Shown here: positions 20,828 through 58,266 of the stretch, in pieces
How positions within the stretch are numbered: the stretch's first letter is position 1
How the letters are laid out: each line of letters opens with the position of its first letter
Assembly (NCBI RefSeq): GCF_001194135.2
Contig: NC_068994.1
Coordinates: 59,066,552-59,130,551 of the forward strand
Origin: Octopus bimaculoides
Taxonomy: Eukaryota
Direction of reading: 5' to 3'
Length of the DNA stretch: 64,000 nt
Position numbers and translations under genes: made by a program
Notes under the pieces: generated by a model
Database searches by the model: none
What the model saw: only the letters and a program-made list of their open reading frames with translations
Told to the model about the DNA's origin: nothing

Positions 20828-21182
20828 CTTTTGCTTGTTTCAGTCATTGGACAGTGGCCATGCTGGGGCACTGTCTTCAAAAATTTTAATCAAACAAATT
20901 GACCTCAATACTTATTCTACTAGTCTCTTTTACCAAGCTGCTAAGCTAGAGAGATGTAAACACACCAACTGGTTGTCAAGTGGTGGTGAGGAACAAACAC
21001 AAGAACACACATGTATGTCTATCTACATACAATGGGCTTCTTTCAGTTTCCATCGATCATATCCACCCAGAGAGCTTTGGTTGGCCCCAAGGCTATGGTA
21101 GGAAACACTTGTCCAAAGTGCCACGCAATGAGACTGAACCCAGAACCATGTGGTTGGGCAGCAAACTTCTTGGCCACTTTTC
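20828..21182 (-). mobile_element. SINE family B
   Basis: Near full-length reverse-complement copy. Confidence 0.85.
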
Positions 21183-21779
21183 TTATGACCCAAAACCACT
21201 TCTGATCCCCACCCATACTTTCATTAAGCACCCACCCACCGTCCTACCNNNNNNNNNNNNNNNNNNNNNNNNNNNNNNNNNNNNNNNNNNNNNNNNNNNN
21301 NNNNNNNNNNNNNNNNNNNNNNNNNNNNNNNNNNNNNNNNNNNNNNNNNNNNNNNNNNNNNNNNNNNNNNNNNNNNNNNNNNNNNTATTAGACAACCGCC
21401 ACCCCACCCACTCACTTCTGGCACCTCTGCTTTTCTTATCCCTTCAACGTTCACCCTGACATCTCATCACCGATTTCTAGTTTCCACACCATCTTTTCTT
21501 CTAACATGTGAGTAGTCATGTAGCTTTTATTCAGCAAGAAACCTGTTCTGCGTTGGCCCCTTTTTCTCTCATACTCCCCCCACTCTCAACTCTTTATGCT
21601 CCTGATATAAAGTCCCCACCTCTACTTGAGGTTTTGTAGCCTTGCAAGCTGTATGATGACCTTACTACCTCACTAGTGTTGGCGGCACGAGAAAAACCAC
21701 TTATATAACACACTGTAGATGGGTTGGCATTCGGAAGGGTTGGTATCCGGCCTTAGAAATCATGCCACACATACTGGAG

Positions 21780-33805: not shown

Positions 33806-36800
33806 ATATCTCATTCAGAGGTTTTAAAACTAGCAGTTTTGCTTCTATATATCATCATTATCATTATTATTTAACTGTTTTCCATACTGCCATGGGATGA
33901 TTATTTGATAAGAGTTGACAAGCTAGAGAGCTGCACCAATTGTCTGTTTTGGCAATGTTTCTACAGCTGAATGCCCTTCCTAATGCCAACCACTTTACAA
34001 AGTATATTGAGTGCTTTTAATATGGCACCGGCTCTAATAAGGTCACTAAGTAACTTACAAGAGAAAATCTCTGAGCTGAAGAGAATAGCAGTATTGAGGG
34101 GTGTGGCTTTATGTTAGGTGATGAAAAGTTAAAATGTGACACAGGAATAGAAGCAGGTGTCTTGCCATGGGGGGGGGGGGCAGATGGCTTCCCCAGTTGG
34201 AAAAGCGGCAGGGAAGAGAGACAGACAGACATGAGATAGTGGTGAAGATGTGTTAAGTTACGAGATGAATGTAAGTGTATTAGTCTTGTAGACTTATTAC
34301 GCATCCAGTGAAGTGTGCTTGCTTAATTTCTCCACAGCCTTCCCACACTATGCCACATGTTCAGTGCTGTGCCCATATTTCACTACCATGAAACACTATA
34401 ATGCATACACAATTATTTTTACAGACCCTCTTTGACTTGTTGGAAGAAACCCTTTGATGTCAATTGAAATAATAATTCTCCAAACATTTTCACCTCATCC
34501 ATCCTCTGTCTATTGTACTTTCACAACATCCATCTCCATCACTGACGAGGTTACTCAGGTAGCAGAAATATTTTAATTAATAAAAGCTTTCACAACAAAC
34601 AACACCTCAACATCTGTCAATATGTTTCACTACTATTGTATAAAATTGTATCTTTACATTCACACCTGCATAAACCTATTATTTCTGAATCAATCCCCAC
34701 TTGTTTACACTTACACCTGTGCATATATACACAGCTGTCCTCACCTTTTACAAAATACCTGCATCTGTTCACTTGTATACACATCCACATAGTGGCTTCT
34801 GTGTGTGTGTGTGTTTGTACTTAGATACCACCAGCATAGTCAATCTGTCACAGTTCTTCAAGCCTCCGTCTGTCTGGATTTCACACATTTAAGATATAAC
34901 TGGAATTTACAGAGCCATGTCTTCTGGAGCCAACCCTCTTCCTGTATCCATGTCATTGTAGTCTTTATATGCAGAATGGCTGCCTGGTGCAAAATGGGAA
35001 TTTTGTATTTAACAAATGATTGTGTAATATGCAAACACACACACATAATTCCATTTAATAGTCGTTATTAGATTGACTTGATAAGCACTAGTTTAGTAGT
35101 AGTATGGAGGCATGCATTGTAACGGCATGTTGCTGCATCCACTATTTCTTGGTGATTCCCTGCTATTCCTGGTAAATGATGCCTCCATACCACACAGGTG
35201 ACAACACTCCAACCCATGGGTCTGTTTTGGGTGGTGGTTGCTACAGAGAGTTTTATGAGGTCAGAGTGAAAACCCTACTTCAATCCCTTTTAGTTGCCCT
35301 TTATGACATGCTGAAGAAATGCTGGGTCTAGCTTTTGACTCACCAGTCCCAACAAAGCATTTGAGCAACACAAAAAATGAAGTGTTTTACTCAGCAATGC
35401 AACACGTCACCCAGTCCAGGAATTGAACCCACAATCTGATGATCATGAGTGTAACACCCAAACCACTAGACCACATACTATTGCTATTAATGCTCATTTA
35501 TTCCTTTTTAATTCAATTTTATGTATTGAAGTGAACTTTAGGTTCCAATTATTTCTGTTCATAATTGATTACATGAGCTTGACACTTTACACTGGGTTTG
35601 GAAAGACATAAGTATTGTCTTACACATTTTGGAATCTATTTTGTCCACGCATGCATATTTGTGGTTTTTTACAATATGACTAAGATTTCTCAAGTAGTGT
35701 TTCAAAATATATCTTTTTGGTGTTGAAACTGCAATGATTTCCAAAAGAATGGCTGATGATGGGATGTTTATACTTATTTAGGAAATATTGGTCGTTTTTG
35801 TGATGTAATTGTCAGTGGGTTCTGGATTTTGTTTCTTCTTTTCTGTAATTTTATGTCCTTCAGCATTCATCCAATGCCTGTTATGGGTATAGGTCTAGTT
35901 TTAATTGTTTTTGTCATTTATTTAGTTTTCTGTTTAAGGTTTGCAATAACACTCTCTGAAAGAACACGTTTCAGTGGCTGGAAACATGTTGGCCTTTGTA
36001 AAACATTTGAAAAAGAAACTTAGCTGTTTCTTGCAGTAAAATACAAATGAAAGCAAAATTTATTCATGGGTCCTTAAAATACTACTGTATTACTACTTTA
36101 CTACTTTGCTAGCATGGACTCCCACAAAATCCCAGGGGTCATATATACTCCAGTTGAGAACCACAGCTCAGAGCTATCAAATTATGAATATAAAATAAAG
36201 ATTCTTAGCACAATTTATTCGGAATAAAATCATATTCAGTGAGATGCAGTTCACATTAATGCTAGGCTGGGGTCTAACTGACAATTGTTTCCTGGTGAGA
36301 CAGAAAAGCTTTGAGATTGGATTGGAAAAATCTTTTTTCTCTGCTAAGCATTTGTTCATCTGGGGAAGGAATTTTTATTGTTTGGTGGTCTTTAAGAAAA
36401 CAAGAAGATGAATGGCTTGTAAGAATAGTGCAACCCATGCAGAGTGAGGTGGTCAGTAGCAGCTGTTGATCTTTTTTCTTTCCATCATCAAAATATTACA
36501 AAACATTCAAGACATCGTCCTTTAGAAACCCATCAACTCACCTGTGTTATAGCCAAATGAACCCATTTCCCCCGCTAGAAATGGCAGCCAAATATTTCTC
36601 AAATCATACCCTACAAGATGGAAGGTCATATTAGATAATGTAATTTCAAGATGTGCTACATCTAAAACTAATTCATGACTAGAAAGTTCAAATTTGATAA
36701 GCTTGCTGGATCAGGGCTGACCTAGGGTTAAACAATATGGGAATTAGTAGTCATACAGGGAAGAAAAACTGAAAGGAAATAAACCCTTAAAAACCTCATT

Positions 36801-39227: not shown

Positions 39228-39723
39228 TCAGGATGTGGGCAAGTGAAACATTTTGCGAGACAGGTAAACACGCAGTTTGTGAGGCAGTGGTAAAGTTGAT
39301 ACAAGCTTCATGTAGTCCTGTGAGGAATTATTTGCACACAGAGTCTGTTGGATGACCTTACGGCACAAGTTGCAGAGGGAGTGCGGTGACCGTATGCTGG
39401 TGGTGTACCACTCAAAGAACGCTTCGTCACCCTTGTCAGACAGCAGCTCAGGTGGGATGCCGGGACCTTTCCATTTCAGCCAGTCAACAAGATTGAGCAT
39501 GTCACAGCCAGCACAATACAACACCTTGATGCACGGCACTTGGTATTTCAGGTCTTCCTTGTAGAGGCCGGTGCTCAATGAGCTGACACACACATAGAGC
39601 GGGGTGTGGCCCCGTTTATCAGTCATGTTTACATCACTGTGCGCGGTCAGTAGGATACTTATCATGTCCTTTAACTTCCAGTGGGCAGCCACATTCAGTG
39701 GGGACTTGCCAGAATTGTCACAT
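39228..39723 (-). CDS. ASB-type protein, last exon with ankyrin repeats and SOCS box
   Basis: Acceptor tattgcag, phase 2; SPLNVAAH and TPLYVCV repeats, BC box PHSLCNLCRKVIQ and cullin box LPLPHKLRVYL; total 322 aa. Confidence 0.95.
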
Positions 39724-40358: not shown

Positions 40359-40600
40359 TTATCAAGAGAGGCACCGGCAGTGAGTAGCTTCTGTACAGTA
40401 GCAAAGCTGGAATGCACAATAGCATTCTGTACACAGATATAGAGGGGTGTCTGTCCATCTTTATCAGCACGATTAATATCAGCACCAGCCTGAACTAGGA
40501 TATCTACCAAGTGAGGACGACCATGATAGGCTGCCTTGTAGAGAGGTGTACAGTCATTACGGTCTGCTAGATTCACATTGGCACCAGCATTTAGAAGGAT
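40359..40600 (-). CDS. ASB-type protein, ankyrin-repeat exon
   Basis: 242 nt, phase 0/2: ILLNAGANVNLADRNDCTPLYKAAYHGRPHLVDILVQAGADINRADKDGQTPLYICV...; canonical TPLxxA ankyrin repeats; donor AA|GTGAGT. Confidence 0.96.
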
Positions 40601-41456: not shown

Positions 41457-41687
41457 CATAGTAATATCAACATGATTCAATGAGACAGCAGCCAAAAGAG
41501 GTGTGGTGCTGTCCTTCACACTGGGAACTGTAGGATTGCTCCAAGGGTAGTTTATGTCTGCACCTTCCAGAATAAGGTTGCGCACAGTCTCCCGTTCATT
41601 GCCCATCACAGCAAGGTGCAGCCGGCGCTCACGCTGTGGCATTCCAAGTACTGCTGCTTCGTTCTTACTCCACTTTGAGTTCCCCAT
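41457..41687 (-). CDS. Ankyrin repeat and SOCS box (ASB-type) protein, first clear coding exon
   Basis: Acceptor ctgcag at 41691, then GCC ATG G (strong context). Encodes MGNSKWSK...RLHLAVMGNERETVRNLILEGADIN...TTPLLAAVSLNHVDITM; donor ATG|GTGAGT. Confidence 0.9.
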
Positions 41688-42104
41688 GGCCTGCAGCAGA
41701 GAGAGACACAGAGAGAGAGATGGTAGCATGATAAGAGGGACATGGAATACAGAGTATATATATATCTGTGTGTACAAAAACAAGTGCGTGTGTGTGTGCT
41801 CTCCATGTTGTTATACATTGGACAGGTTATGCTGGTTTCAACCAGAATTACCTATTCAGAGTTACTCCCCCTCTTAGACGGCTTGGGGCAATGCTTCTCA
41901 AACTATCTGATGTGGCGTACCGGCAGTTTTTTTTCTCCCCCAATGTGCCAGGGACCGGTAATATTTCTTAGTAATATTAATTTATACCGGAAACAATATA
42001 TATAATGGATATAATAAAAGTTGATAATTTTTTAAATCTTATATTTATTTTGTAAACAAATAATACAATATTACATAAGCATTTTATAATGTTTCTTTCT
42101 TTTC

Positions 42105-42660
42105 TGGAAACTCGCCATGCTGGAGCACCACATTAAAGGGTTTCAGTTGAAGAAATCAACCCCAGGACTTATTTTTTAAAAAGCCTGGTATTTATTCTAT
42201 TGGTCTCTTTTGCTAAACTGCTAAGTTATGGAGACATAAACACACTAGCATCGGTTGTCAAGCGATGGTGGGGGGGGGGGGAACAAACACAGACACATAA
42301 ATATATATCTATACATATATATACATACACAAACACACACACATATAGTCAATTCAAACAAGAACAAGCAAGAAAAACAACAACAACGCAAGGACGTGGA
42401 ACAAGTACTGTGTTATTCGATGCTCAGGAAAGGAAAGAAAAGAAAGAGAATTGCATGTTTTGAGCGGAGCTCCTCATCAGAAATATAGAAAAAGTCTACA
42501 CACACACACACAGAACAGGCTTCTTTCAGTTTCCACCTACCAAATCCACTCACAAGGCTTTGGTCAGCCTGAAGCTGTAGTAGAAATCACTTGCCCAAGG
42601 TGGCATGCAGTGGGACTGAACCCGGAATCATGTGGTTGGAAAGCAAGCTTCTTACCACAC
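42105..42660 (-). mobile_element. SINE family B with expanded internal spacer
   Basis: Tail part 42105-42300 and head part 42515-42660. Confidence 0.8.
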
Positions 42661-42813
42661 TCATATCTATATGTGTGTATGTGTGTGTGATTGTTTGTCA
42701 GATTTGATGATGACCTTGGAACTACTGGAAGAAATTTGACAACAGAATAGAAGAAAGAAAGAAAGAAAGTAATAAGGAGAAGAAGAAGATGTTGTAATTA
42801 GCATCTCATACAG

Positions 42814-43388
42814 CAGCGTTTCTCAACCAAGATTCCCCGAAACCCTAGAGTTCTGCAAAAGGTTCCTAAGGGTTCCNNNNNNNNNNAAGATTCCCCGAAA
42901 CCCTAGAGTTCTGCAAAAGGTTCCTAAGGGTTCCGCAAGAAAGAGTGAGATAAGCTAATGATAATTTCATGATCGTAATATTACTTTACATGCACAAAAT
43001 ATCATTGGTTATTGTAATATAGACATCTGAGTGGTTGGCGTTAGGAAGGGCATCCAGCTGTAGAAACTCTGCCAAATCAGACTGGAGCCTGGTGTTGCCA
43101 TCCGGTTTCACCAGTCCTCAGTCAAATCGTCCAACCCATGCTAGCATGGAAAGCGGACGTTAAACGATGATGATGATGATGATGATGACATCATCCTCTC
43201 TAACCCATTATGTTATCAAAAAAATATAACCACACACACAGACATATGATATGATATTTACCTCATGAACTATGATGAAAAAAGGTATGAGAAAGATATG
43301 GTGTATAATTTATTTTGTACAGGGGTTCTTTGAGACATGGAATTTATTTTAAAGGGTTACACAAGGGTAAAAAGGTCAAGAAACACTG
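42814..43388. mobile_element. hAT-type MITE with nested SINE
   Basis: TIRs cagcgtttctcaacc / ggtcaagaaacactg; family A SINE at 43026-43190 inside; 8-bp TSD not evident. Confidence 0.6.
43026..43190 (+). mobile_element. SINE family A ((GAT)n tail), young copy
   Basis: gagtggttggcgttaggaagggcatccagctgtagaaa...catggaaagcggacgttaaacgatgatgat; many copies in window. Confidence 0.9.
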
Positions 43389-44085
43389 CACAAGAGTACT
43401 GCAGATGGTCAACCACTGGTCTAAAATATATGCTTTGTAAAAGAGAAAAATCATTCCTTTGGGTGCAGTTGTGACAATGATATTGATAGAGGTGGCCATG
43501 GAAGCTCATTGTTGATTGCAATACCAAGTATTTGTTTGAGAGATTTCAATGTGGGTTGGTCATTTGGAGCAGTTGAAGGGAACATGGCTTACAATAAGTT
43601 TTCTAATGAAATGAAACAAGAGCTCTTGATGAGATGAGGAATATTAAAAAAGGCCAGAGAAGAATAGCTTTCTATGGGTGTCAGTGGAGGAAAGATAAAA
43701 TGTATTGGACGGGAGTGCTTTGCCATTAATCAGTAGGTATTTGGAAATGTATTTACAGTAATGTACTAAACAAAGGGTCAAGGATACACACACGCACATA
43801 CATAGATGGTTACATATACATACAGACATTTCCTACCTTCAAAAAGTGAAACAACAGTTTGTGACACTCCAAAAGACAGTCAAATTGTTTGTGATGTTTA
43901 ACTTGCTTAGAATTGCCCATTGCTGCAGTTATTATCTATCCAAGACACAGTGAGGCCTTATTGAGGTGTGTGTAGTCCTAAATGAGTGAAGGTACAGTGT
44001 GACTTCACTGAGACAGATGATGTCCCAGCTGAGTAAAGCAGAACAGGGACTGACAACACTTGAGTGTGTCACAGTTTCTAAAGAA

Positions 44086-44117
<32 letters not shown>

Positions 44118-44377
44118 NNNNNNNNNNNNNNNNNNNNNNNNNNNNNNNNNNNNNNNNNNNNNNNNNNNNNNNNNNNNNNNNNNNNNNNNNNNNNNNNNNN
44201 NNNNNNNNNNNNNNNNNNNNNNNNNNNNNNNNNNNNNNNNNNNNNNNNNNNNNNNNNNNNNNNNNNNNNNNNNNNNNNNNNNNNNNNNNNNNNNNNNNNN
44301 NNNNNNNNNNNNNNNNNNNNNNNNNNNNNNNNNNNNNNNNNNNNNNNNNNNNNNNNNNNNNNNNNNNNNNNNNNNNN

Positions 44378-44431
<54 letters not shown>

Positions 44432-44601
44432 TATATATATATAACACTCTCCTTTGAAAATATATTTACACCTTTTTATCTACAGCAGGAAATTTTCTCC
44501 ACAACAAAACACAATGGATGGCTTTCTTATGAATTCGAATATGCCTCAAGCATATTTGAAATGGTAACAGGTTTATATTAATAACTAAGTACATCAATAT
44601 G

Positions 44602-44808
44602 TATGAGGTGGGTGAGCTGAGAAGTTTCTGGCTTTAAGGGTATGATGAAAGGCCTGGTTGGAGACCCAAACCTTCCAAGTTCTTTCACAGGGCTTAGAAA
44701 AACTGGATTGCTGCAATAAATGAGTGAATCTGAGGGGAGGGGAATATGTTGAATAAAATCATAATTAACTGATCTTCCTGTTTTTCTTTTATCCAAATCT
44801 ACCTCATA
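44602..44808 (+). mobile_element. Internally deleted mariner (MITE)
   Basis: Termini tatgaggt...acctcata are inverted; retains aggggaatatgttgaataa (RGEYVE*), the mariner transposase C-terminus. Confidence 0.65.
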
Positions 44809-46248
44809 CTTATTAACACAAAAGAAATAAGTTTTTTTTTAACACATGTAGAATTATAAAGAGAAGAAAAAACGCTTAAAATGCGCTTGGAGACTTAAAA
44901 AAAAACCATTTATTAACAAATACTTAACTGATTCCACAATTTCATGGCTTTCAAAAAGATGAAGCCAACTGGAGCAATGACATGTCTGTCTCCATGACGA
45001 CTGGAGTCTGAAAATTTGCTCCTTTTTTTTTCAGAGATTATTACTCAAATTGCCATCAGTTAAAATAAAATTTGGCTGGTAATTGTTAGCTTTTTCATAA
45101 TAGGTGGTGGTGTCTTCTAGAAAGAACATGGTGCTTTTGTAGTACTCAATACATCAATAACGACAACATCATATCTCTTAACTGCTTCTTTGATGATGTC
45201 ATTATTTTTGTGTTCATGGAAAAGACTCCAAGAAATAAATTAAATACTACTTGGAAGATACTACGCAATAAGGTTAACTGATAACGGATGGGTCAAAGCA
45301 ATAGACATTAAAGAACTAAGAAGGACAAAAATAATTCAAATAAAACAAATATTCTATTCTACAGTACCATACACAAGCATTCCACCCCACTCCCACCACA
45401 CACAAGCATTCCACCCCAACACACAAACACACGAAATATGGTAACATACAATATTATTCATCAAAACATTCCAGTATTGAAGCAAAACTGAAGAATGGAA
45501 AAAAAAACCCCCAAAACACTTGAAATATACAAAATATGAAACCCCAACAAGGCAGAAATGCATCCAGCATTTGAACTTGCCACTGCAGGGGAAGGTTTTC
45601 ATCTCCCTTCAATATATTATCTCCAAATGAATACAGCAATAAAGTTGCTTTTCTTTTTGCAATGTATTTACATTAAGTATGATACATATGTGGCTATTTT
45701 AATCTAATACAATGGATATAATGGACATTGTATAGATATATATTTAAATACAGAAACACATGTACATACATATGCACATACATACATATAATACATGTGT
45801 GTATGTGTTGAAAATATCAAAGATATGTGATAAAACTGTAGAGTTAGTAAAACTGCTTCAAACAGCAGCTGGATAAAGAAGATTAGTAAAACAGTGAAAA
45901 AGCAGGACAATATGATGATTATCAGGGGTTAAAGATGAGAAACAGAGCAAGGAAAATAGTTCAGTGTGTGTGTGTGTGTGTGTGTGTATTACTTGGTTTC
46001 TTTATCTTTTATAGGATTACCTATATCCTATGATGTGAGATGCAGATGAGAGAAAAGAAAAGGATCCAGACCAAATTTTGAGTCATTTTCTATCACACAC
46101 ACACACACAATGACAGTAATAATCTGGTTTCTTTTCATTAAACTTTGCCTGCGTCTTGCAGTGTAGACTTAGTAATGATAGGTAATCTTGTAAAACATAA
46201 AAACAGCAACTAACACATACACACACATTCATAGGTGTATACATACAC

Positions 46249-46283
<35 letters not shown>

Positions 46284-47303
46284 CTCATCAATATCATTGT
46301 TTTTATGTCCATTTTTCCACGCTTGTATGGGTTGGACAGAGTTTGTTGTGGCAGATTTTCTACGGCCAGATGCCCTTCCTGTTGCTAACCCCCACCAATT
46401 TTCAAGCACAGCAGTATTTCCCAAAGACCAGACATGTTCCTGCAGAATATTGGCAATGAATGCCAATGTTTGTATGACAGTGACAATCATTTACAACTGT
46501 TACATGATATCAAAACAAGAAGATACCCTCTTTCTCTCACACCCACACACATAATGGGCTTCCCTTAGTTTCCATCCACTAAACTCACTCAGAAAGGTTT
46601 GGTCAGCCTGAGGCCAGAAGATACTTACTCAAGGTGCCACACAATATCTCCCTTCCAGCTTCTCCCACTCATCCTTTTATAATGTGGGATAGCCATGGAT
46701 CTCCTCTGTAGCAAGACACATGTATTTGTTCCCCTAGCATATTCTAGCCTTCAACACCTAGCATAACCTGCCAAACCCTTCTAAATATACTCCCACTTAG
46801 TCAAGGGGAGGGCTGTCCCCTTTTCTTTTCCTTTCTTCACTTTTTCTTGCAAGTTACTTGGCGACCTCACTGGCAACACTGTCACAAAAATAGCAGCCTA
46901 CACACTACAAAGAGGTTGGTGTTAGGAAGGACATCCCAAAGCTAAAATTAGGGCCTCCCACTGCTCTGCAACTTGTTGGATCCTTTCAAGCCAACTAACC
47001 CATATCAGCTTGGAAAACAGATGTTAATTGATATGTGTGTGTATATGCACACATACATTGAAGTATATATACAAATATTTATCCACACACAGACACCCAC
47101 ACACTGAAATATAAATGTCATCCCTCTGATGGTAACAGTTATTACAAGGGAGGTAATCATCTTGCCTTTGTGTGAAGCAGGATTAGAAAGTTGTAATGAA
47201 AGTTAAGGTATTGCAAGGAAAAAATGACACAGAATTTAAGGCGGTGCTTCAGCATGGCCACAGTCAAATGACTGAAACAAGTAAAAGAGTAAAAGACTTA
47301 ATG

Positions 47304-47349
<46 letters not shown>

Positions 47350-48363
47350 CATTAAGTAAACAAAAAAACTNNNNNNNNNNATATATATATATATATTGCA
47401 TTAAGTAAACAAAAAAACTTTAATATGTAAATTCTGTGTCCTTTTTTATACATATACTATACACACACACACACATATATATACATATATATATATATGT
47501 ATAGTTTACTGTACTGTTTAAGGTAGGGTCAACAAAAGCAAAGAACTTCATCCAGTGAGGGATAAATATCATTTAAATATCATGAAATGATACATACATC
47601 TATCTCATTCTCTCCCCTCCCTCCCTCCTTCCCTCTCTCTCTCTCCATATATACATATGTATAAATGCTAATCCTGTTTTGAACTGTGATGAGATAATTA
47701 CTGCCCACGTAATAGCTGTAACAAAGAGAGGGATCACATGCTTGAAAATTTTCAGTTGTGATTTGGGAAAACCACTTGAAACTGTTTCTGACGGTCAAGG
47801 CTTTTGTATTTGTGAATAGATAAAGTCTGTTCTACTGTACACAAGGGAACATCACTACAAAATAACAACTTGAGACTTGTGTTGTCTACGCTTTAAAGAA
47901 AACATTAGAAAGAACGTGTGATGTTGTTTGTAGCTAAAACTAAAAGTATTGCCTGAGACATTCTCACAAGGGAAACTGTTATTACTCTGCATTTTAACAC
48001 CAACAACTTCCTCTCTGTTCTTTCAATTCCTAATCTTCTGACATTCTTTAAAATAAACAGATGGAAAATTTCATGAATTTCCTTCAAACTAATTATTTCC
48101 ATCTGAAATAAAATGTCTCTTTTTATAAAACGTTTCAGATTATATTAAGCTGAAGATTTCTAAAAAGAATGAAATAGTGCTCTACATGATTACCAACGAC
48201 TTCTAAGAACATTTTACTAAGTCAAGAATAAATGTCTATGTGAATTCTATGTACCTTTTCCTTATAATTGCTTAATTTCGACTTCAAATTTCTAATCTTC
48301 TTTTATACTGAAATAAAATGATTATCTCTCTTGTAAAAACTGTAACTGTTAGAAGGCTAACAC

Positions 48364-48396
<33 letters not shown>

Positions 48397-48946
48397 TGTA
48401 TACTAGTAGCTTGGAAGATAAAACCCCTCAACTGAGCAGTATTAAGGGGTGCAGCCTTATGCTAAGTGATAGGAGGTTAAAGTATGACAGAGACAGATAT
48501 CTTGCTGTAGGGGAGCTACATGGGTAACCATGTTGGAAAAGAGAAAGAGAAGGATGGTGAGGATGTGTGAAGGTGTATCCTTAAGCTCAGGAATGTGAGA
48601 AGTGACAGAGAGGATTGGACAGGGGGAGTGGGTAGGGAAGTAGGCTCATGGGAGTGTGAATGAAGATTGGGAGATGTGTGTGTGTGTGTGCACACACGCA
48701 TGTACTCTCTCACACACACACACACACATATGTATGCATGTATGTATAGAGTGGATGTGTATATTAGACTTATGGTTGCTGCCACCACACATGTAGTTTA
48801 TGTTTGCTTTATCAATGAATTGGGGCTACAAACCAGCCCCACATTAGCAGCAGCAGCACCACTACATTGCCACACTCCAACTTCACCACCACCACCACCA
48901 CCACCACCACAATCACATGCTGCCCTACCAATAGGCAAGCCTTCAC

Positions 48947-49322
48947 CTGGTTATTTGACCTTGTAGAAATAACAGTTGAAAACTCTTTCGAACCACATGT
49001 TACCATTTTCAAAAAAGGGGACCATTTGTATAGGATAAGCAGGACAACCTGGAACTTTTTGGGGTCTTTTTTTTTTCAGTGTTAACGAAAAGTGTAAAAG
49101 AAAATTTACGCTCATAACAAGAACAAGAACAACAATAATGAATATTAATAATAATTGAAGAATATTCACTTTGGAAATTGTCCATGTGTAGATGCTCCTC
49201 AATTGTGAGACACACCGGCAGACAGGGGTCAGAGGACAGCATTTAGAGATGGGGAAACCACACCACATTTTAGTCAAATCCATCACGGTTGCCTCTGTGC
49301 TCACTGTTTTCAATGACTTCTG
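48947..49322 (-). CDS. Candidate exon carrying an ORF with a hydrophobic segment (stop at 48951)
   Basis: (CT)n tract then tandem acceptor tcagCAG; open frame QKSLKTVSTEATVMDLTKMWCGF...ILQLLLIFIIVVLVLVMSVNFLLHFSLTLKKKRPQK...YFYKVK*; donor CAG|GTGAAG 4 nt after TAA. No family recognised. Confidence 0.45.
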
Positions 49323-49389
49323 CTGACATGTGTGCGTGTAAGAGAGAGAGAGAGAGAGAGAAAGGGAGAGCAAGAGAGAAAGAGGGAGA

Positions 49390-49425
<36 letters not shown>

Positions 49426-51791
49426 GTGTGCAAAGTTTGTTGCTGCTGCTGCAGTTGTTGTTGTAGTGTTTACTGCAGCAGAATGTATTAATACATTTAG
49501 CTAGGATTACAGAACGATGGCAATAAAGGTGGTGGAGATATAGGTTGGCTGGAAGTAAACACTATTACTACTACTACCACCACCACCACCACCACCACTA
49601 CTATTTAATAACAATAAAAAAAAAATCAATGATTAAGAACATTAGCAGTAACAGCATTGATACTAACTGCAACATCAACAACATCCTTCCTACCCCCCAA
49701 TCCCTCCCTCCCACCAGCAAGTGAATGAATCTGTTTGCAGTTTCATTGATCTGCTAGAAATATCAGCCAAATTTACATCAAATAATATCCAAAACTATAA
49801 AAAAAAACATCAAAGGACAGCAACGTCTGAATAAAAAATGAGCTGGAACACAGCAGCAGGAACATCGTTGATAATAGGGCTGATGCAACTGGGCTAATCT
49901 GCAGTTAAATAACACCAACAACAACAGCAACAGCACAACAACAACAGCAAAAACAGTACAATAACAACAACACTAATGCAAAGAGAATCAGAGCATTAGC
50001 GGCACCAATGACAAAAGCAAACAGAAGACAACAACGCTAAGACTTACATACAACACTGCTACATAAGGGGATATATGAAAAAAAGCTGAATAACAGACAT
50101 ACTTCTTAAAGGAGCAATCCTAACTCCCTACATTTGGCCAACAGAAAGAAACAATAATACAAACAATATGTTTGGTCCTTCCTGTAGTATGCCAGTCCTA
50201 CCTGGGCCCTTAATCTCTCCATTATAAACCACAATAAAATACAAAGGACACAAGACAGTGCATGATGCTTCAACTCACAGGTTGTACACAGATCAGCTCC
50301 ATAAACCACATCCAAAACACAACAAAAATATGTAAAATGAAAGACAAATTGGACATGAAACGAACACTGCTGTCATAACAAACTTCCCCCTCTCCAGTTC
50401 CTGTCACTACATTAAGAAAAAAAAACCACTTCTAAATTTCCAGATATATTCAAATGCCAGACACATTTAATAGCCTAAAGCATGACTACAACACCATCCT
50501 ACAAACATTATCTCTCTCCCTCTATCTCTTAGTCAACCCTGACAAAGATAGACACAGAAATAATTGTAATAACTGTAATCTCAGTGATCCCTAAAACTGC
50601 CCAAAACAAGGGGCACAGGAAGAGCAGTTGTTGCCTTTTGACTGAATCTGTTTTGCCTGTCAACACAGTGGGCACCACTTCCAGAATTGGCAGGAATACA
50701 GAAAGTAGACAGATAAAAAGGGGAGAGTGTAGCATGTCCAAAGTGTCTTACTGTACCTCGTATAATTCCTCATTGCATGGCAAAGAGTCTGGTTGGGTCC
50801 TTGGCCTGACTCAGATATGCTATAACTCAGAATATAGATCTGTGGGTCATAGCTTGTTGTTTGGCCAACTACTTAGATGCCACAGGACAACACAACACCA
50901 CCAACAACACCACCATCACCTCCACCATAAACCAACAAGAGAGACTATGTGTGCTTACTGAAACTAGGAGGTACAGCATCCAAACTACACACACTCATCT
51001 AAAGAACAAAAGAAACATTGAATAATGCAAGGATTATCAAAGTTGGAGTATCAGTGATGATGAGTCTTCTACTGGATCAGGACTGACTCAGGGTTAAACA
51101 ACAATAATAAATATCAATATATTCAATCAATTTGCTAGAGATAACAGCCAAGTTGCCCTTAAACCAAGCCCAACCATCTTCGAAACAGACACACTAGATG
51201 ATGAGGGTCTTGGGTTCACAACACATTGGAAAAATGTGGGATGGGCATGGTTGGAAGGTTTTTGATTAAATGATCAAGGCTAGCCTACAGCCAAAAAGGA
51301 TTCCAACACCACAAGCAAATCCCAGTTATATGTACAACTTTCAACTTAATGTGACTCGGTGTTTTTTCTTCCATCCTGTCTCTCCATATTAAACTTGCAC
51401 CACGAATTGTGGTCCGTCCACTCTGCTACAAAGAAGTGGTGTGAGGGAGGTTGGCATGTTCATACTGGCACAATAGCTGCAGTGCTGCCATCTGATGACT
51501 ATTAAAAGCTAGACACAGCTACATTCGTACACATTCACACCATTACACTCAACCAGTTAACTGTTATATAGATACTCTCTCTCTCTCTCTCTCTCTTTCT
51601 CGCGCAGACACACACACACACACATACTAAACTGTACTTACTCTTGTGGTGATAAACATTGGCATACATACACATTCATGTCTGTGTTAGTGTGTGTGTG
51701 TGTGTGTGTGTCTATACACACAATCAGAGATACAAACACACCTGCACACTTCAATTGTTTATATACTTAATGCACTAACAAAGACACATGC

Positions 51792-51825
<34 letters not shown>

Positions 51826-52557
51826 AATAGAACACACACACACACACACACACACAAAGTGAAATGGTATCAGACAATCCAGGCATTTACTTCAGGTACC
51901 ATTTTTGTGAACGGCAGTTATTTGGATTTGTAGGAAAGAGAAATTCATCAACAGAAAATCTGGAAGGTTATCTTCAGTCACGGAGTATATATNNNNNNNN
52001 NNNNNNNNNNNNNNNNNNNNNNNNNNNNNNNNNNNNNNNNNNNNNNNNNNNNNNNNNNNNNNNNNNNNNNNNNNNNNNNNNNNNNNNNNNNNNNNNNNNN
52101 NNNNNNNNNNNNNNNNNNNNNNNNNNNNNNNNNNNNNNNNNNNNNNNNNNNNNNNNNNNNNNNNNNNNNNNNNNNNNNNNNNNNNNNNNNNNNNNNNNNN
52201 NNNNNNNNNNNNNNNNNNNNNNNNNNNNNNNNNNNNNNNNNNNNNNNNNNNNNNNNNNNNNNNNNNNNNNNNNNNNNNNNNNNNNNNNNNNNNNNNNNNN
52301 NNNNNNNNNNNNNNNNNNNNNNNNNNNNNNNNNNNNNNNNNNNNNNNNNNNNNNNNNNNNNNNNNNNNNNNNNNNNNNNNNNNNNNNNNNNNNNNNNNNN
52401 NNNNNNNNNNNNNNNNNNNNNNNNNNNNNNNNNNNNNNNNNNNNNNNNNNNNNNNNNNNNNNNNNNNNNNNNNNNNNNNNNNNNNNNNNNNNNNNNNNNN
52501 NNNNNNNNNNNNNNNNNNNNNNNNNNNNNNNNNNNNNNNNNNNNNNNNNNNNNNNNN

Positions 52558-52594
<37 letters not shown>

Positions 52595-52664
52595 CAAATA
52601 TATATATATATATATACATCAAACTAGACAAAGGTTATGAGAGTTATAAAAAAAGTTATTGCAA

Positions 52665-52880
52665 AACTGGTTAGGACCAGGATTAGCCTGATGTACAGCT
52701 TGGCTCTGTCTCCTGAAAAGACATTACTAATGTATTTGTTGTGAGACAAATACGTGGTTAGGAATAAGCCTCTACACTTAGCATTTTTGATCTGGAGAAT
52801 GCCTATAAGTGGGCATAGCTCACGGATGACTTTAGTGCACAGTTTGGGGTACATGAGGGATCACTTCTCAGCATCCTTCT
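52665..52880 (+). mobile_element. RTE-clade RT remnant
   Basis: DKYVVRNKPLHLAF/DLENAY and DDFSAQFGVHEGSLLS segments with an internal deletion. Confidence 0.7.
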
Positions 52881-53344
52881 ATTTATTATAGTTCTCACTA
52901 CCATAACAAAGGGCCTTATTCTTAACTCATTCTCTCACTGACCCTCGGACACCATCTTCCCCTTCCCTTCTTATTACTCCCTTCCATTTTGTCCTTCCTT
53001 CGTCCACCATTTTACTCAGGTAGCACTGTGTCATCTCTTACTCAAGCTGCCTACTCTCTTCCTTAACTTTTCTTAATAAACCTCACATGCTACATTTCCC
53101 TTTCCCTCCTGTTACCCCCATTTCTAATACAGTTAGTCCCCTAATGCCCTCTCACAAAAATAAACCTGTGTAACTCCTGATAAAAACTATCTTGTATCCT
53201 AATGAACAGTCCAATCAATTTTGGTATGGAAGACAGACTGACCACCAAAGCTCCCTATCCTATCACCACTTTATCTTTCCCATTTCCTTGTTAATTTCTG
53301 CCATGACTCTTCTCCTTCCCCTCTTTTATGGCTCTTGCCTCAAA

Positions 53345-53952
53345 AGATGTACCGAGAGTGATAAAAATCAAGCATCCAGCCAACATCCTGGTGTTTGGAG
53401 GGATCACTAGTGATGGCGATGTTATGCCTCCATTCATGTTCCCACACAGAACACGGAGGTCTACATCAAATGCCTGGGGGAGGTAATGCTGCCCTAGGTC
53501 AAGAGGGTGGAAGACCCTATGTCTGGCAACAGGACTCTCCACCATGCCACACAAGCAGGAGAACCCAGTCATGGCTGTCCAACAATTTCTGTGACCACAT
53601 AACCCCTGATACCGAACTCTCCAGACTGCAACCTCCTTGGTGATTATGTGTGGGGCACAGTTGAGCGAGAGACCAGCAAAACTCCTTGTAACACCAAAGA
53701 TGAACTGAAGGCAAGGATTATGGCAGCATTCACCAACTTAAACAAGGAGACTATCCAGAAGAGTTGCAGAAGATTCCAAAGTTGTCTGGAGGCTGTGGTT
53801 GGAACCAATGGCGATTTTATTGAATAAATTTACTCTTTAGTCTTTCAAGATATTTTTATGTAATTTTGGTAAATATGTCTGTTAAAATGAGATGTCAGAG
53901 TTATTTTCATTTTTGCATAATTTAGACGACAGTTTATTCACCGCAGCCTGTA
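53345..53952 (+). mobile_element. Tc1/mariner transposase 3' remnant (DD37D/maT-like) with right TIR
   Basis: KHPANILVFG...YVWQQDSPPCHTS...PNSPDCN..DYVWG...GDFIE*; element ends gcagcctg followed by TA. Confidence 0.85.
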
Positions 53953-54254
53953 TATATGTAACACTTAAATAATTACCGGATGTATAAAATGAAGGAAGCC
54001 AATAACTGTTACAGATCATCATCATCATCATCATCATCATCATTTAATGTCCACTTTCCCATACTTTCCTGTGTCAGATGGAATTTGCTGAGGCAGATTT
54101 TCTACAGCCAGTTGTCCTCCTTGTTTCCAAACAAGGTGAATGTTGGTCATGTATACCCCCAAGATCAGACATGTTGTCAGGGACAATTGGAAATGGAAGA
54201 CACTGCTCACATGATGCTGGCATACATTTACAAGTATCACATGGAGTCAAGGCA

Positions 54255-54450
54255 AAAAGACAGTGTAACACACACACACATACAAATATATGACAAGCTT
54301 CTTTCAGTTTCCATCTACCAAATCCATTCACAAGGCTTTAGTTAGCCTAGGACTATAGTAGAAGACACTTGCCCAAGGTGCTATGCAGAAGGACTGAACC
54401 TAAGGCCATGTGGTTGGGAAGCAAACTTCTTACCACACAGCCACGCCAGT
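54255..54450 (-). mobile_element. SINE family B, head and core
   Basis: agaagacacttgcccaaggtgc...ttaccacacagccac. Confidence 0.85.
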
Positions 54451-54575
54451 GCCTGTGTGTGGTTGAATCTTTGGTCAGTGCCTTATCAATTCTGACATCA
54501 GCTGCCCCCTGATGGTCACAACAATCTACAATACACAGCTTTCTAGTTGACTCATTTCTATTAATAAGGACTTAC

Positions 54576-54719
54576 CTGGAGGTCGTAGTTCAGCAGAAAT
54601 TCGGAAGATGTCATCATAGGGGTGAGAGTCGTGTCAGTGCCCCGGGGTTCAGGGTTTCCACTATGGTCCTGAGCATCTTCTTTTAAATCAGGGGACTGGA
54701 CGCAGCTCATCATCTTCAT
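54576..54719 (-). CDS. Candidate 144-nt exon (MKMMSCVQSPDLKEDAQDHSGNPEPRGTDTTLTPMMTSSEFLLNYDLQ)
   Basis: Pyrimidine tract plus caacag acceptor, perfect CAG|GTAAGT donor; only frame 0 is open; phase 0 matches the 49322 acceptor. Could be 5' UTR. Confidence 0.5.
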
Positions 54720-56115: not shown

Positions 56116-56789
56116 TTTCATTGATAAATTTGTCATATAAAAGTGAGTATAAATATTATGAAACAGAAAGCAAGGAGAAAAAAAGGTCCATGAGAGTTCT
56201 TCACAGATAGGTAGATGTCCAGAGATTTCATACATTAATATCACAGATAAAGGGGAAGAAGAGAATCCAAAGTCATCCTTTACAGCTGTTTCTGAGAGTT
56301 GGTGATCAATAAGTGTAGTCGTGGATATTGTGTGCATATATACATGTACTAAACTGGTACATGTACTAAAATGTAAATGGAATAACACAAATTTAAGTTA
56401 TAATTGTAGTGTCACCAATGCCATCATCAGAAGGAATAAATTTGGCTGTTGAAGATAATATCTATAAACAGAAAGCCTTATTGTGACAGAGGGAAAGAGA
56501 GTGGGGATAGAAAGTGGGGGTAGGCAACAAGAAAGGTTTAAAAGTAAGAGCATAATCAAAATAACATTAGAGGTGGGTGTGGGGACAAGAAAAAAGAGAG
56601 AGAACAAAGAATGCATAAAGTAGAGGGATGGAGAAGTAGCTACATCATCAGTTAACATTCACTTTCCATGCTGGCATGGGTTAGACCAAGAGGAACAAAT
56701 TCTGTGAACAATTCCTTTCACATAAATGAAAGAAATCAGCATCGTCTTGACATTGGACTTCCCTTGACACACATTTTGGGAGGTCATGG

Positions 56790-57290
56790 TGACATTGAAT
56801 GCTTCCACTGACTTGATCACTGCTTTGTTTCTGGGTCGTAGCCATAGCAACCAGCTTTCCTCACCTGGGATGACCTTCAAAAAAAGGTCTGGATCAACTT
56901 CCAGTTCACGACATGCATTCAGTTGTGATTGCTTTTGATCTTCTGTGAAACAAGTGAGGCACCAATTTTGTTGCAACTCGTTTCATTCGCAATTCCTCGC
57001 TCAAAATTCGTTGGCAGCAGCTCCAGGACACATCAGTCATATCAACAAGTTCGTCAATTGTTTAGCAAAGGTCCTCCACAATCAGTTCGTGAATTTTCAT
57101 GATGTTTTCATCCATTTGGAAGGTTGACAGTTGCCCTCAACAAGGTCTTCAAGGGCCAAGTGACCATTCCTAAAGCGTCCTTGTAAGCTGTTTGAAGCCT
57201 GACAGTTGTTTCAGCCACTGTTTTCCCCAGTGAAAATCAAAAATTTCATGGAAGCACACTGCTCCTTCATCTCAGCCATCTCAAAAATCG
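56790..57290 (-). mobile_element. mariner transposase 5' remnant
   Basis: MAEMKEQ...TIDELVDMTDVSWSCCQRILSEELRMKRVATKLVP...GEESW/YGYDPETKQ*SSQW. Confidence 0.85.
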
Positions 57291-58266
57291 ACAAACAAGG
57301 GAGAAGCACTGCAAAACAAAGACACACCACGTAGCAGTATGACCTCCCTATATGATGCCGGTCAGCAGACTAATGCCTGAGGGTCACATCAAATGGCTTC
57401 TAGTAGAGTAAGTCTGAATTGGCTTGTCCCACAGAGAACACTTCTGGTTACTTCTGGGTACCCCCTTCTATACACACACACATACACAATAGTGAAATGC
57501 AGGACGATGTCAAAAGAACACACAAAGGATGTGGATACACCCACCCCTCATCAGTTATTGACCAATCACATTTTCAACACCTGTGCATATATACACATAA
57601 ACACACATATGCATATATCTTTATACACACATACATATATAAACATACATATACACACATATCTAAACACATACATATACAATTAGATAAGATACAAATA
57701 GTATTTCATTAGCATAATCAATATAAATATTACACCACAAGTTTCATTAGAACAATGGATTAAATTAGATTTAAGAAAAATATGAACCTACTTGAATTAT
57801 TGTAGAAAACAGATGTTAAAGTGAAGTGGTAGGGATTTGTTTGAGGAGAAGTGATTCAGGTTCTGTTGGCCAAAGAAGATGGAGTACTGAAGCCAAAGAC
57901 CTGTGGATCTGAGGAAACACTAAAACTTGTACAACAGAAAGGGAAGTAGTGAGCCACAGTTTTGAATCTGAGGGAACTCAGCTCATATAAAGGAATTTTC
58001 CAATTTGTAAAAGAATCTTGATAGCAAACCAAATGCCACAGACAAGAAAAGAAAACGAAGCAGAACTCTGTGGTCAGTGAAGTTTAAACGATTGAAGAGA
58101 AGAATTGCTTGACCAGAAGTATGTTGTCCAGTGAGTTGAGAATGACCAAAGGTGTATTTTTCCAGGCAACAGAGAATTTCAGAAGTCTTTTTTACGTCCG
58201 GGGAGCATAGAAAAGTATGTTGTCTTGGCAACTGAGAATGACAAGAAGCTGAAGGAATTTGTTTAC

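What the first reader, a model, noticed from the sequence alone, without database searches (positions are those of the whole stretch)
41685..54719. Upstream membrane-like ORF poised either 7 nt before, or fused in frame to, an ankyrin-SOCS-box E3 adaptor
Seen: a 144-nt exon (54719-54576, perfect CAG|GTAAGT, only frame 0 open) is phase-compatible with the acceptor at 49322. Together they give a 171-aa ORF (110 aa from the ATG at 49283) with a Cys-rich segment, a ~25-aa hydrophobic stretch and a KKKRPQK cluster, ending AAG GTC AAA TAA CCAG|GTGAAG. Splicing the donor at 48947 to the ASB acceptor (41690) gives TAA-CCAG-GCC-ATG: a stop 7 nt ahead of the ASB start, a bicistronic/termination-reinitiation layout. 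Using the weaker donor AAG|GTCAAA at 48960 instead skips the stop and fuses in frame (...FYK-AMGNSK..., 492 aa). Knowledge: SOCS boxes with LPLP recruit ElonginBC-Cul5, and the positive-inside rule would put the ankyrin/SOCS part in the cytosol. Inference: a splice switch between a soluble ASB plus small membrane protein and a membrane-anchored Cul5 adaptor. Caveats: the hydrophobic stretch overlaps T-rich low-complexity sequence, and ORF1 may be 5' UTR or a separate gene (candidate acceptor ttttatttcag at 48103).
Basis: partly seen in the sequence, partly recalled or inferred. Interest (0 to 1): 0.7.

Follow-up and report, generated by a model that had tools for sequence, protein, structure and literature searches.

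The report
Alternative N-terminal exons of octopus ASB gene
The upstream reading frame is not a membrane protein or a second cistron: two pieces of it are separate, already annotated alternative first coding exons of an octopus ankyrin-SOCS-box ubiquitin-ligase adaptor, and the membrane-like part is T-rich intron that happens to stay open in this one species.

Summary
The window is Octopus bimaculoides (CM046614.1).

The proposed architecture does not hold.
- RefSeq isoform X1 (371 aa) joins the 144-nt exon (54719-54576) directly to the ASB acceptor at 41690.
- Isoform X2 (361 aa) starts at the ATG at 49283 and leaves through a third donor, AAA|GTGAAT (last exon base 49170), upstream of the hydrophobic stretch.
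- I rebuilt both proteins exactly from the window.

In gap-free O. sinensis and O. vulgaris:
- the 13 codons between the acceptor at 49322 and that ATG carry two in-frame stops;
- the sequence after 49170 has three indels that are not multiples of three, so the TAA is out of frame and the C-terminal ~40 residues differ completely.

The 144-nt exon is under strong purifying selection (dN/dS 0 to 0.14). RNA contigs of another cephalopod show it spliced directly to the ASB exon.

The hydrophobic stretch, KKKRPQK, the TAA and both proposed donors are therefore intronic. A third, apparently unannotated, phase-0 leader exon lies at 43920-43837. All four assembly gaps are intronic and their flanks are collinear with the gap-free relatives.

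The parts
57792..57803 (-). 3' end and donor (ACAATAATTCAA|GTAGGT, last exon base 57792) of an upstream 5' exon. It is non-coding in O. bimaculoides (ATA). In O. sinensis the orthologous exon ends ATG ATT CAA and supplies the 'MIQ' of isoform X1.
54576..54719 (-). Leader exon 1: 144 nt, phase 0, 48 aa (MKMMSCVQSPDL...TPMMTSSEFLLNYDLQ). It is spliced directly to 41690 in RefSeq isoform X1 (XP_014779238, 371 aa). It is an internal exon, with an acceptor aacag|ATG.
   Evidence: exact reconstruction of P0124; dN/dS is 0 vs O. sinensis (4 synonymous, 0 non-synonymous changes), 0.066 vs L011 and 0.14 vs L001; the same junction appears in RNA contigs of another cephalopod.
49284..49322 (-). Segment between the acceptor-like site at 49322 and the ATG. 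It is open in O. bimaculoides but carries two in-frame stops in O. sinensis and O. vulgaris, so it behaves as 5' UTR.
   Evidence: 4 substitutions in 39 nt.
49170..49283 (-). Leader exon 2, coding part: ATG at 49283 to donor AAA|GTGAAT. It encodes 38 aa, MDLTKMWCGFPISKCCPLTPVCRCVSQLRSIYTWTISK (Cys-rich), in phase 0. It is used by RefSeq isoform X2 (XP_014779239, 361 aa) and by O. sinensis X3 / O. vulgaris CAI9732604.
   Evidence: exact reconstruction of P0125; 3 substitutions in 114 nt against 42 in 441 nt of flanks, Fisher p=0.008; a homologous exon with the same GTGAATATT donor is present in L011.
48951..49169 (-). Intronic read-through of leader 2. It contains the T-rich hydrophobic stretch, KKKRPQK and the TAA (48953-48951). 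It is not conserved as a reading frame.
   Evidence: 19 substitutions plus three non-3n indels in 216 nt. (54% T; 3.9% background for open frames of this length). (no counterpart in L011).
48945..48962 (-). No annotated isoform uses them.
43837..43920 (-). Candidate leader exon 3, in no protein record I found: ATG to AAG|GTAGG, 84 nt, phase 0, MGNSKQVKHHKQFDCLLECHKLLFHFLK. The ORF length and the donor are the same in four octopod genomes.
   Evidence: no protein record carries it.
41457..41690 (-). ASB exon A. It carries the common acceptor ctgcag|GCC ATG GGG; the ancestral start ATG is at 41687 (MGNSKW...).
40359..40600 (-). ASB exon B (ankyrin repeats).
39228..39723 (-). ASB exon C (last ankyrin repeats and the SOCS box: SLCNLCRKVI BC box, VSTLPLPHKLRVYL Cul5 box). 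The stop codon is at 39230-39228.
47053..47160 (-). N-terminal exon of the older O. bimaculoides model (UniRef A0A0L8GQG8: MITSLVITV...CIYTSMY). It lies in low-complexity sequence and is absent from the RefSeq and O. vulgaris models, so it is probably an ab initio artefact.

Best explanation
**Proposed model.** The region is the 5' half of one gene, an ankyrin-repeat-and-SOCS-box (ASB) substrate receptor of Octopus bimaculoides. Several alternative 5' exons are each spliced, in phase 0, to a single acceptor (41690) that lies 3 nt upstream of the ancestral start codon.

**Products**
- A 371-aa protein with an acidic, Ser/Thr/Pro-rich 48-aa leader (exon 54719-54576).
- A 361-aa protein with a 38-aa Cys-rich leader (49283-49170).
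- A 322-aa protein that starts at the ancestral MGNSK. This form is annotated in O. sinensis and O. vulgaris.
- Probably a fourth form with a 28-aa basic leader (43920-43837).

**What is shown.** They stay in frame only in O. bimaculoides and only by chance.

**What is inferred.** The leaders change what sits at the N-terminus of the adaptor. In other molluscs and in annelids the protein begins MGN[SA][KR]S, a myristoylation-type motif. In cephalopods this Gly is internal in the extended isoforms, and position 6 is Trp. I therefore expect the choice of leader to set localisation or regulation of the Cul5 adaptor. The Cys-rich leader is a candidate S-acylation site. This step is untested.
For: **Locus and isoforms**
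- The window is identical to the O. bimaculoides CM046614.1 gene range.
- RefSeq proteins XP_014779238 (P0124) and XP_014779239 (P0125) are reproduced residue for residue. The exon sets are 54719-54576+ASB and 49283-49170+ASB.
- The same two leaders and a 322-aa form are annotated in O. sinensis by Gnomon.
- The Cys-rich and the 322-aa forms are also annotated in O. vulgaris. That pipeline added alternative forms only from Iso-Seq/RNA-seq PASA assemblies (PMC10700109).

**Leader 1**
- RNA contigs from 47 Logan assemblies of another cephalopod carry ...NYDLQ|AMGNSKW. An in-frame TAA lies immediately before MMKMMSC.
- dN/dS is 0, 0.066 and 0.14 in three comparisons.
- Its length difference in L011 is 15 nt, which keeps the frame.

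**Leader 2**
- It has 3 substitutions in 114 nt, against 9.5% in its flanks (p=0.008).
- A syntenic homologue in the distant octopod L011 ends at the same GTGAATATT donor in phase 0.

- Stops lie upstream of the ATG and frameshifts lie downstream of position 49170 in O. sinensis and O. vulgaris.
- Between O. sinensis and L011, the collinear blocks blastn recovers are leader 1, leader 3 and the three ASB exons. The leader-2 homologue shows up only by tblastn.

**ASB identity**
- Pfam finds ankyrin repeats and a SOCS box.
Against: **No direct RNA evidence for this species**
- I could read no O. bimaculoides RNA data. The junctions rest on RefSeq and ENA gene models and on RNA contigs of another species.
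- A rare, species-specific transcript using donor 48947 or 48960 cannot be excluded.

**Weaker support for leaders 2 and 3**
- The annotated donor AAA|GTGAAT matches the consensus less well than CCAG|GTGAAG.
- Translation of leaders 2 and 3 is less secure than that of leader 1.
- In L011, open frames of at least 65 and at least 28 codons occur at 13% and 34% of positions. ORF retention there is weak evidence on its own.
- Leader 3 is in no protein record.

**Untested function**
- The lipidation and localisation role is inference only.
Confidence: 0.85

Rival explanations
1. Exon 54719-54576 joins the acceptor at 49322 to make a 171-aa Cys-rich single-pass membrane protein. A choice between donors 48947 and 48960 then gives either a bicistronic mRNA (stop 7 nt before the ASB ATG, with reinitiation) or a 492-aa membrane-anchored ASB.
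For: - The arithmetic holds in O. bimaculoides.
- The 19-residue window ILQLLLIFIIVVLVLVMSV has a Kyte-Doolittle mean of 3.27.
- CCAG|GTGAAG is a good consensus donor and is conserved in three Octopus species.
Against: - No annotated isoform in three species uses these junctions.
- No protein among 5.8 billion clusters contains the junction or the hydrophobic stretch.
- O. sinensis and O. vulgaris have two in-frame stops in the linking segment.
- In those species indels of +2, +1 and +2 put the TAA out of frame and rewrite the last ~40 residues.
- The hydrophobic stretch is 54% T, and open frames of this length are common in this window.
- There is no counterpart in L011 beyond the 9 nt at the donor.
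Confidence: 0.03
2. ORF1 belongs to a separate small gene nested upstream of the ASB start. An example would be one that continues at the acceptor near 48103.
For: The ORF begins with a conserved ATG.
Against: - The only database relatives of ORF1 are ASB isoforms that use its first 38 codons.
- The TAA lies upstream of donor 48947, so any further exon would be untranslated.
- The frame is not conserved in sister species.
- Pfam gives only a sub-threshold TMEM9 hit (E=0.3, 11.4 bits against a cut-off of 28.6) on the T-rich stretch.
Confidence: 0.02
3. The upstream exons are real but act only as 5' UTR. Translation always starts at the ancestral MGNSK ATG, and the in-frame upstream ATGs are annotation artefacts of choosing the longest ORF.
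For: - The MGNSK Met is retained in all cephalopods and is the start in almost all other lophotrochozoan orthologues.
- A 322-aa isoform is annotated.
- Leaders 2 and 3 have only modest evidence of coding constraint.
Against: - Leader 1 has dN/dS of 0 to 0.14, keeps its frame through a 15-nt length difference in L011, and has a fully conserved 19-residue motif across cephalopods.
- In RNA contigs a stop lies directly before its ATG cluster.
- Cephalopods have replaced the Ser at position 6 of the myristoylation-type motif with Trp. That fits a Gly that is no longer N-terminal.
Confidence: 0.1

Closest known systems
ASB (ankyrin repeat and SOCS box) substrate receptors of Cullin5-ElonginB/C ligases
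   Same: - N-terminal ankyrin repeats plus a C-terminal SOCS box (Pfam).
- A BC-box SLCNLCRKVI and a Cul5-box LPLP, read directly from the sequence.
- A size of about 320 aa, similar to short vertebrate ASBs.
- The only PDB hit for the C-terminal third is human ASB7 (8y1u, E=1).
   Different: - No clear one-to-one vertebrate orthologue was established. The ASB7 match is not significant.
- NCBI names the protein 'PP6 regulatory ankyrin repeat subunit B' from ankyrin similarity alone.
- The orthologue family found here is lophotrochozoan, with a conserved MGN[SA][KR]S N-terminus.
Genes with alternative first/5' coding exons spliced to a common second exon, giving N-terminal isoforms
   Same: At least three 5' exons, all in phase 0, join one acceptor (41690) and give proteins with different leaders and an identical body.
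   Different: - The common acceptor lies only 3 nt before the ancestral start codon, so the whole ancestral protein is kept and merely extended.
- The leaders appear to be restricted to cephalopods.
N-terminal lipid-anchor motifs (N-myristoylated MGxxxS/T; S-acylated Cys clusters), from my general knowledge
   Same: - Non-cephalopod orthologues start MGNSKS.
- Leader 2 has five Cys in 38 residues, with the KCC and CxC positions conserved in L011.
   Different: - Cephalopods have Trp at position 6, and the Gly is internal in the extended isoforms.
- No lipidation was tested. This is a resemblance only.
Termination-reinitiation / uORF-regulated mRNAs
   Same: Under one hypothetical splice (48947>41690), a stop would lie 7 nt before the ASB ATG.
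   Different: That splice is not annotated in any species examined, and the stop is out of frame in O. sinensis and O. vulgaris.

Membership tests
ASB (ankyrin repeat + SOCS box) protein | Ankyrin repeats N-terminal to the SOCS box | tested here: met
   Pfam Ank_2 8.1e-42; Ank 2.5e-28 in five stretches, residues ~23-210
ASB (ankyrin repeat + SOCS box) protein | C-terminal SOCS box above the curated threshold | tested here: met
   PF07525 scores 29.5 bits against a cut-off of 23.5, residues 270-312
ASB (ankyrin repeat + SOCS box) protein | BC box (S/T/P-L-x3-C/S/A-x3-hydrophobic) and Cul5 box (LPxP) | tested here: met
   SLCNLCRKVI and VSTLPLPHKLRVYL, read from the translation. The motif definitions come from my general knowledge.
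ASB (ankyrin repeat + SOCS box) protein | Binds ElonginB/C and Cullin5 | not testable with these tools
   Needs co-immunoprecipitation or in vitro reconstitution
   ILQLLLIFIIVVLVLVMSV has a Kyte-Doolittle mean of 3.27, but the DNA is 54% T
   All annotated isoforms of O. bimaculoides, O. sinensis and O. vulgaris leave the exon at 49170, before the segment. No protein in the collection contains it.
   Indels of +2, +1 and +2 in O. sinensis and O. vulgaris; the C-terminal ~40 residues are unrelated; absent in L011
Bicistronic / termination-reinitiation mRNA | Upstream stop within a few nucleotides of the downstream start on one mRNA | tested here: inconclusive
   True only for the hypothetical splice 48947>41690. 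No transcript data for this species could be read.
Bicistronic / termination-reinitiation mRNA | The layout is conserved in relatives | tested here: not met
   The TAA is out of frame with the ATG in O. sinensis and O. vulgaris
Alternative 5' coding exons giving N-terminal isoforms | Different 5' exons joined to one common acceptor in frame | tested here: met
   P0124 and P0125 are rebuilt exactly from the window. The same forms occur in O. sinensis and O. vulgaris.
Alternative 5' coding exons giving N-terminal isoforms | The junction is seen in RNA | tested here: met
   Met for leader 1 in another cephalopod: 47 Logan RNA contigs, L001-L008. O. bimaculoides itself could not be tested.
Alternative 5' coding exons giving N-terminal isoforms | The leaders evolve as coding sequence | tested here: met
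   Leader 1: dN/dS 0 to 0.14, and a length difference that keeps the frame. Leader 2: constrained (p=0.008) and with a homologue in L011. Leader 3: suggestive only.
N-myristoylated protein | Gly at position 2 and a small residue (S/T/A/G/C/N) at position 6 | tested here: not met
   Cephalopods have MGNSKW, with Trp at position 6. Non-cephalopod orthologues have MGNSKS/MGNARS, which meet the feature. The motif definition comes from my general knowledge.

The most novel reading that the evidence does not exclude
Cephalopods may have converted an ancestrally N-myristoylated lophotrochozoan ASB adaptor (MGN[SA][KR]S start) into a gene with a cassette of at least three mutually exclusive phase-0 leader exons. 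These are an acidic/phospho-type leader, a Cys-rich leader and a basic leader, all spliced 3 nt before the old start codon. Promoter or first-exon choice would then switch the Cul5 adaptor between membrane-associated forms (S-acylated Cys-rich leader, or exposed Gly2) and soluble forms.
Probability: 0.15. Interest if true: 0.45.

Novelty: already known. Interest (0 to 1): 0.2.

Why it matters
- It removes a false lead. There is no membrane-anchored or bicistronic ASB here. The gene and its two main isoforms are already in RefSeq.
- The case shows that in T-rich cephalopod introns an exon's reading frame can run on for 70 or more codons and mimic a transmembrane segment. Comparison with a sister species settles the question.
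- What remains of modest interest is evolutionary. The cephalopod lineage added coding leader exons in front of a conserved myristoylation-type start of a Cul5 adaptor.
- One further conserved leader exon (43920-43837) appears to be missing from current protein annotations.

Tried and rejected
- **PDB sequence search with the whole ASB protein.** It returned only generic ankyrin and DARPin hits. The C-terminal third gave only ASB7 at E=1. No vertebrate orthologue is claimed.
- **Pfam on the 171-aa ORF.** It gave only a sub-threshold TMEM9 hit on the T-rich stretch.
- **Exact look-ups of P0002 and P0001.** Both failed because only the longest product of each gene is indexed. This was solved with P0123, P0121, P0126 and P0124.
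- **Logan contig L013.** It proved to be unspliced or genomic, with intron sequence upstream of the acceptor. It gives no junction evidence for Octopus.
- **Species of the RNA runs SRR292714xx.** A literature search for the run accession found nothing.
- **Literature search for ASB plus myristoylation.** Nothing relevant was found.
- **ORF retention in L011 as proof of coding for leaders 2 and 3.** I down-weighted this after finding that open frames of those lengths are common in that locus.
- **The MGNSK start of leader 3.** It might be a duplicate of the ASB start. It is MNNSK in O. sinensis and O. vulgaris and MAHSQ in L011, so I do not claim a duplication.

Full report
**Observation**

- The 144-nt exon 54719-54576 is open only in frame 0. 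It is bounded by aacag|ATG and CAG|GTAAGT.
- An acceptor-like cag|CAGAAG lies at 49322. The joined ORF is 171 aa and ends KVK-TAA.
- The donors with last exon bases 48947 and 48960, and the acceptor ctgcag|GCC ATG GGG at 41690, are as described.
- The stop lies 7 nt before the ATG under one splice. The 492-aa fusion follows from the other.

The downstream gene has three coding exons (41690-41457, 40600-40359, 39723-39228).
- It encodes 322 aa with ankyrin repeats and a SOCS box above Pfam's threshold.
- It has a BC box (SLCNLCRKVI) and a Cul5 box (LPLP).

The letters are therefore all there. The open question is whether the proposed exon connections are real.

**Identity of the locus**

A search with the 171-aa ORF against 5.8 billion protein clusters returned one hit. 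It is an Octopus vulgaris ankyrin protein that begins MDLTKMWCGFPISKCCPLTPVCRCVSQLRSVYTWTISK|AMGNSK.... It uses only the first 38 codons after the ATG at 49283 and then jumps to the ASB exon.

A second search and a cluster look-up gave the full set of annotated isoforms.

| Species | Isoform (accession) | Length | N-terminus |
|---|---|---|---|
| O. bimaculoides | X1 (XP_014779238) | 371 aa | the 48 aa of the 144-nt exon + AMGNSK... |
| O. bimaculoides | X2 (XP_014779239) | 361 aa | MDLTK...TWTISK + AMGNSK... |
| O. sinensis | four isoforms | 374, 371, 361, 322 aa | the same two leaders, a 322-aa form starting MGNSK, and a form with three extra residues (MIQ) |
| O. vulgaris | three isoforms | 361, 322, 248 aa | Cys-rich, MGNSK, and a SOCS-less form |

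I rebuilt X1 and X2 residue for residue from the window.
- X1 uses exons 54719-54576 plus the ASB exons.
- X2 uses 49283-49170 plus the ASB exons.

The window's gene range is identical to CM046614.1 of assembly GCA_001194135.2.

The real donor of the second leader is AAA|GTGAAT, with last exon base 49170.

The O. vulgaris annotation added alternative forms only from PASA assemblies of Iso-Seq and RNA-seq (PMC10700109). The donor at 49170 is therefore supported by an annotation pipeline independent of NCBI's.

**Assembly gaps**

All four gaps lie in introns.
- The gap-free loci of O. sinensis (L009) and O. vulgaris (L010) are collinear with the window across the whole gene.
- At 42877-86 the flanks overlap in the relatives.
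- 44118-44377 corresponds to about 165 bp.
- 47371-80 lies in simple repeats (about 0.5 kb in O. sinensis).
- 51993-52557 corresponds to about 1.0 kb.
- The gap-free O. sinensis gene encodes the same 371-aa structure, so no frame depends on a gap.

I aligned 49420-48850 with O. sinensis and O. vulgaris and translated each.
- The 13 codons between the acceptor at 49322 and the ATG read QK*LKTAST*VTV in both relatives. An exon1-to-49322 joint ORF is interrupted there.
- The 38 coding codons have three substitutions: two synonymous and one Ile>Val.
- After position 49170 there are 19 substitutions in 216 nt and three indels of +2, +1 and +2 in homopolymer runs.
- As a result the last ~40 residues are unrelated. 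The TAA is out of frame, and the phases of the two proposed donors are swapped.

In the more distant octopod L011 (GCA_054771915.1), blastn against the window finds only the 144-nt exon and the three ASB exons.

The 72 codons that remain open past the true donor in O. bimaculoides are not unusual. About 3.9% of all minus-strand positions in the window have at least that many. The hydrophobic segment is 54% T.

**What the upstream pieces are**

*Leader 1 (54719-54576)* is a well-behaved coding exon.
- Against O. sinensis it has four synonymous and no non-synonymous changes.
- dN/dS is 0.066 against L011, where a 15-nt length difference keeps the frame, and 0.14 against RNA contigs of another cephalopod.
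- In those RNA contigs (47 Logan assemblies, L001-L008) the junction ...NYDLQ|AMGNSKW is direct. An in-frame TAA sits immediately before MMKMMSC.
- The motif TP[LV]TPMMTSSEFLLNYD is invariant across these species.
- Leader 1 is an internal exon. An upstream exon ends at 57792. It contributes ATG ATT CAA in O. sinensis but reads ATA in O. bimaculoides.

*Leader 2 (49283-49170)* is more conserved than its flanks (3 in 114 nt against 42 in 441 nt, p=0.008).
- It has a syntenic homologue in L011: MGILDLTLLCCDYVRPKCC...KCCDVPFLCQCVALLKHLYARTVSR|GTGAATATT.
- That homologue keeps the same donor, the same phase and the conserved Cys positions.

*A third leader.* I also found a collinear conserved block between O. 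sinensis and L011 that is not an annotated coding exon.
- It is an 84-nt ORF ending AAG|GTAGG in phase 0, at window 43920-43837.
- It has the same length in four genomes: MGNSKQVKHHKQFDCLLECHKLLFHFLK, MNNSK... in O. sinensis and O. vulgaris, and MAHSQLEEDDRQVDCVLQFHKILFHFLK in L011.
- No protein record carries it, so it is a candidate third leader.
- In L011, open frames of these lengths are common. For leaders 2 and 3 the case therefore rests on sequence and donor conservation, not on ORF retention.

**Mechanism**

*Shown:* one ASB gene has several 5' exons that each join one acceptor 3 nt before the ancestral ATG. The resulting proteins share the ankyrin/SOCS body and differ in their N-terminal leader.

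*Inferred:*
- Orthologues in bivalves, gastropods, a chiton and annelids start MGN[SA][KR]S, a myristoylation-type motif (Gly2, Ser6). Cephalopods have MGNSKW preceded by leaders.
- In the extended isoforms the Gly cannot be N-terminal.
- I therefore think leader choice changes localisation or regulation of the adaptor. The Cys-rich leader is a candidate for S-acylation.
- None of this was tested. I give the gene-structure claim 0.85 and the lipid-switch idea about 0.15.

**Comparison with known things and novelty**

- The protein meets the sequence definitions of an ASB. No vertebrate orthologue could be assigned, because the ASB7 hit has E=1.
- Alternative first coding exons are an ordinary way of making N-terminal isoforms, and these isoforms are already in RefSeq.
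- The transmembrane and reinitiation readings fail the tests that could be run.

I rate the finding as already known and of low interest. Two small residues remain: the cephalopod-specific leaders placed in front of a conserved myristoylation-type start, and the unannotated exon at 43920-43837.

**Limits**

- I could not read O. bimaculoides RNA data. The one Octopus Logan contig recovered (L013) is unspliced.

Noticed in passing
window 43837-43920 (-); L009 36559-36642; L010 20449-20532; L011 26259-26342: A conserved 84-nt ORF (MGNSKQVKHHKQFDCLLECHKLLFHFLK) ends at a conserved AAG|GTAGG donor in phase 0 with the ASB acceptor. It is apart from leader 1 and the ASB exons, the only collinear block blastn finds between O. 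sinensis and the distant octopod L011. No protein record contains it, so it is a candidate unannotated third leader exon.
   Followed up: partly
N-termini of orthologues P0004-P0029: Non-cephalopod lophotrochozoan orthologues begin MGN[SA][KR]S, a myristoylation-type motif. Cephalopods have MGNSKW with upstream leaders. Several non-cephalopod models carry short Cys-rich in-frame leaders (MCCPVWNIILCRV-, MSLVCKCVR-, MLFLRSCCCLKGEPEC...).
   Followed up: partly
window 57786-57803 (-): An upstream 5' exon ends ACAATAATTCAA|GTAGGT. The O. sinensis orthologue reads ATGATTCAA and supplies the MIQ of isoform X1, whereas O. bimaculoides has ATA. The 144-nt exon is therefore an internal exon.
   Followed up: partly
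window 34910-34978 (-); L010 41262-41351: This is the homologue of the far-downstream 3' exon that gives the O. vulgaris 248-aa isoform (P0001) a C-terminus without a SOCS box. The O. bimaculoides copy has a 15-nt deletion. The isoform leaves ASB exon C at an internal donor after ...KLKDMI.
   Followed up: partly
window 47053-47160 (-): The N-terminal exon of the older O. bimaculoides model (UniRef A0A0L8GQG8, MITSLVITV...CIYTSMY) lies in TG/CA-rich low-complexity sequence. It is absent from the later annotations and is probably an ab initio artefact.
   Followed up: no
window about 32459 downwards (-); L012 32261-35492: The next gene downstream on the same strand encodes a legume-like (L-type) lectin domain protein of about 533 aa (Pfam Lectin_leg-like). 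The same neighbour is present in O. vulgaris and L011.
   Followed up: no
window about 56662-57061 (-): Broken open frames resembling a mariner-type transposase (e.g. ...VIPGEESWLLWLRPRNKA...) lie in the intron between the upstream exon and the 144-nt exon. This looks like a decayed transposon.
   Followed up: no
window about 54290-54460, 42500-42690, 21030-21220 (-): Repeated interspersed-element copies translate to ...GFGRWKLKEA... [quoted passage not shown]
   Followed up: no
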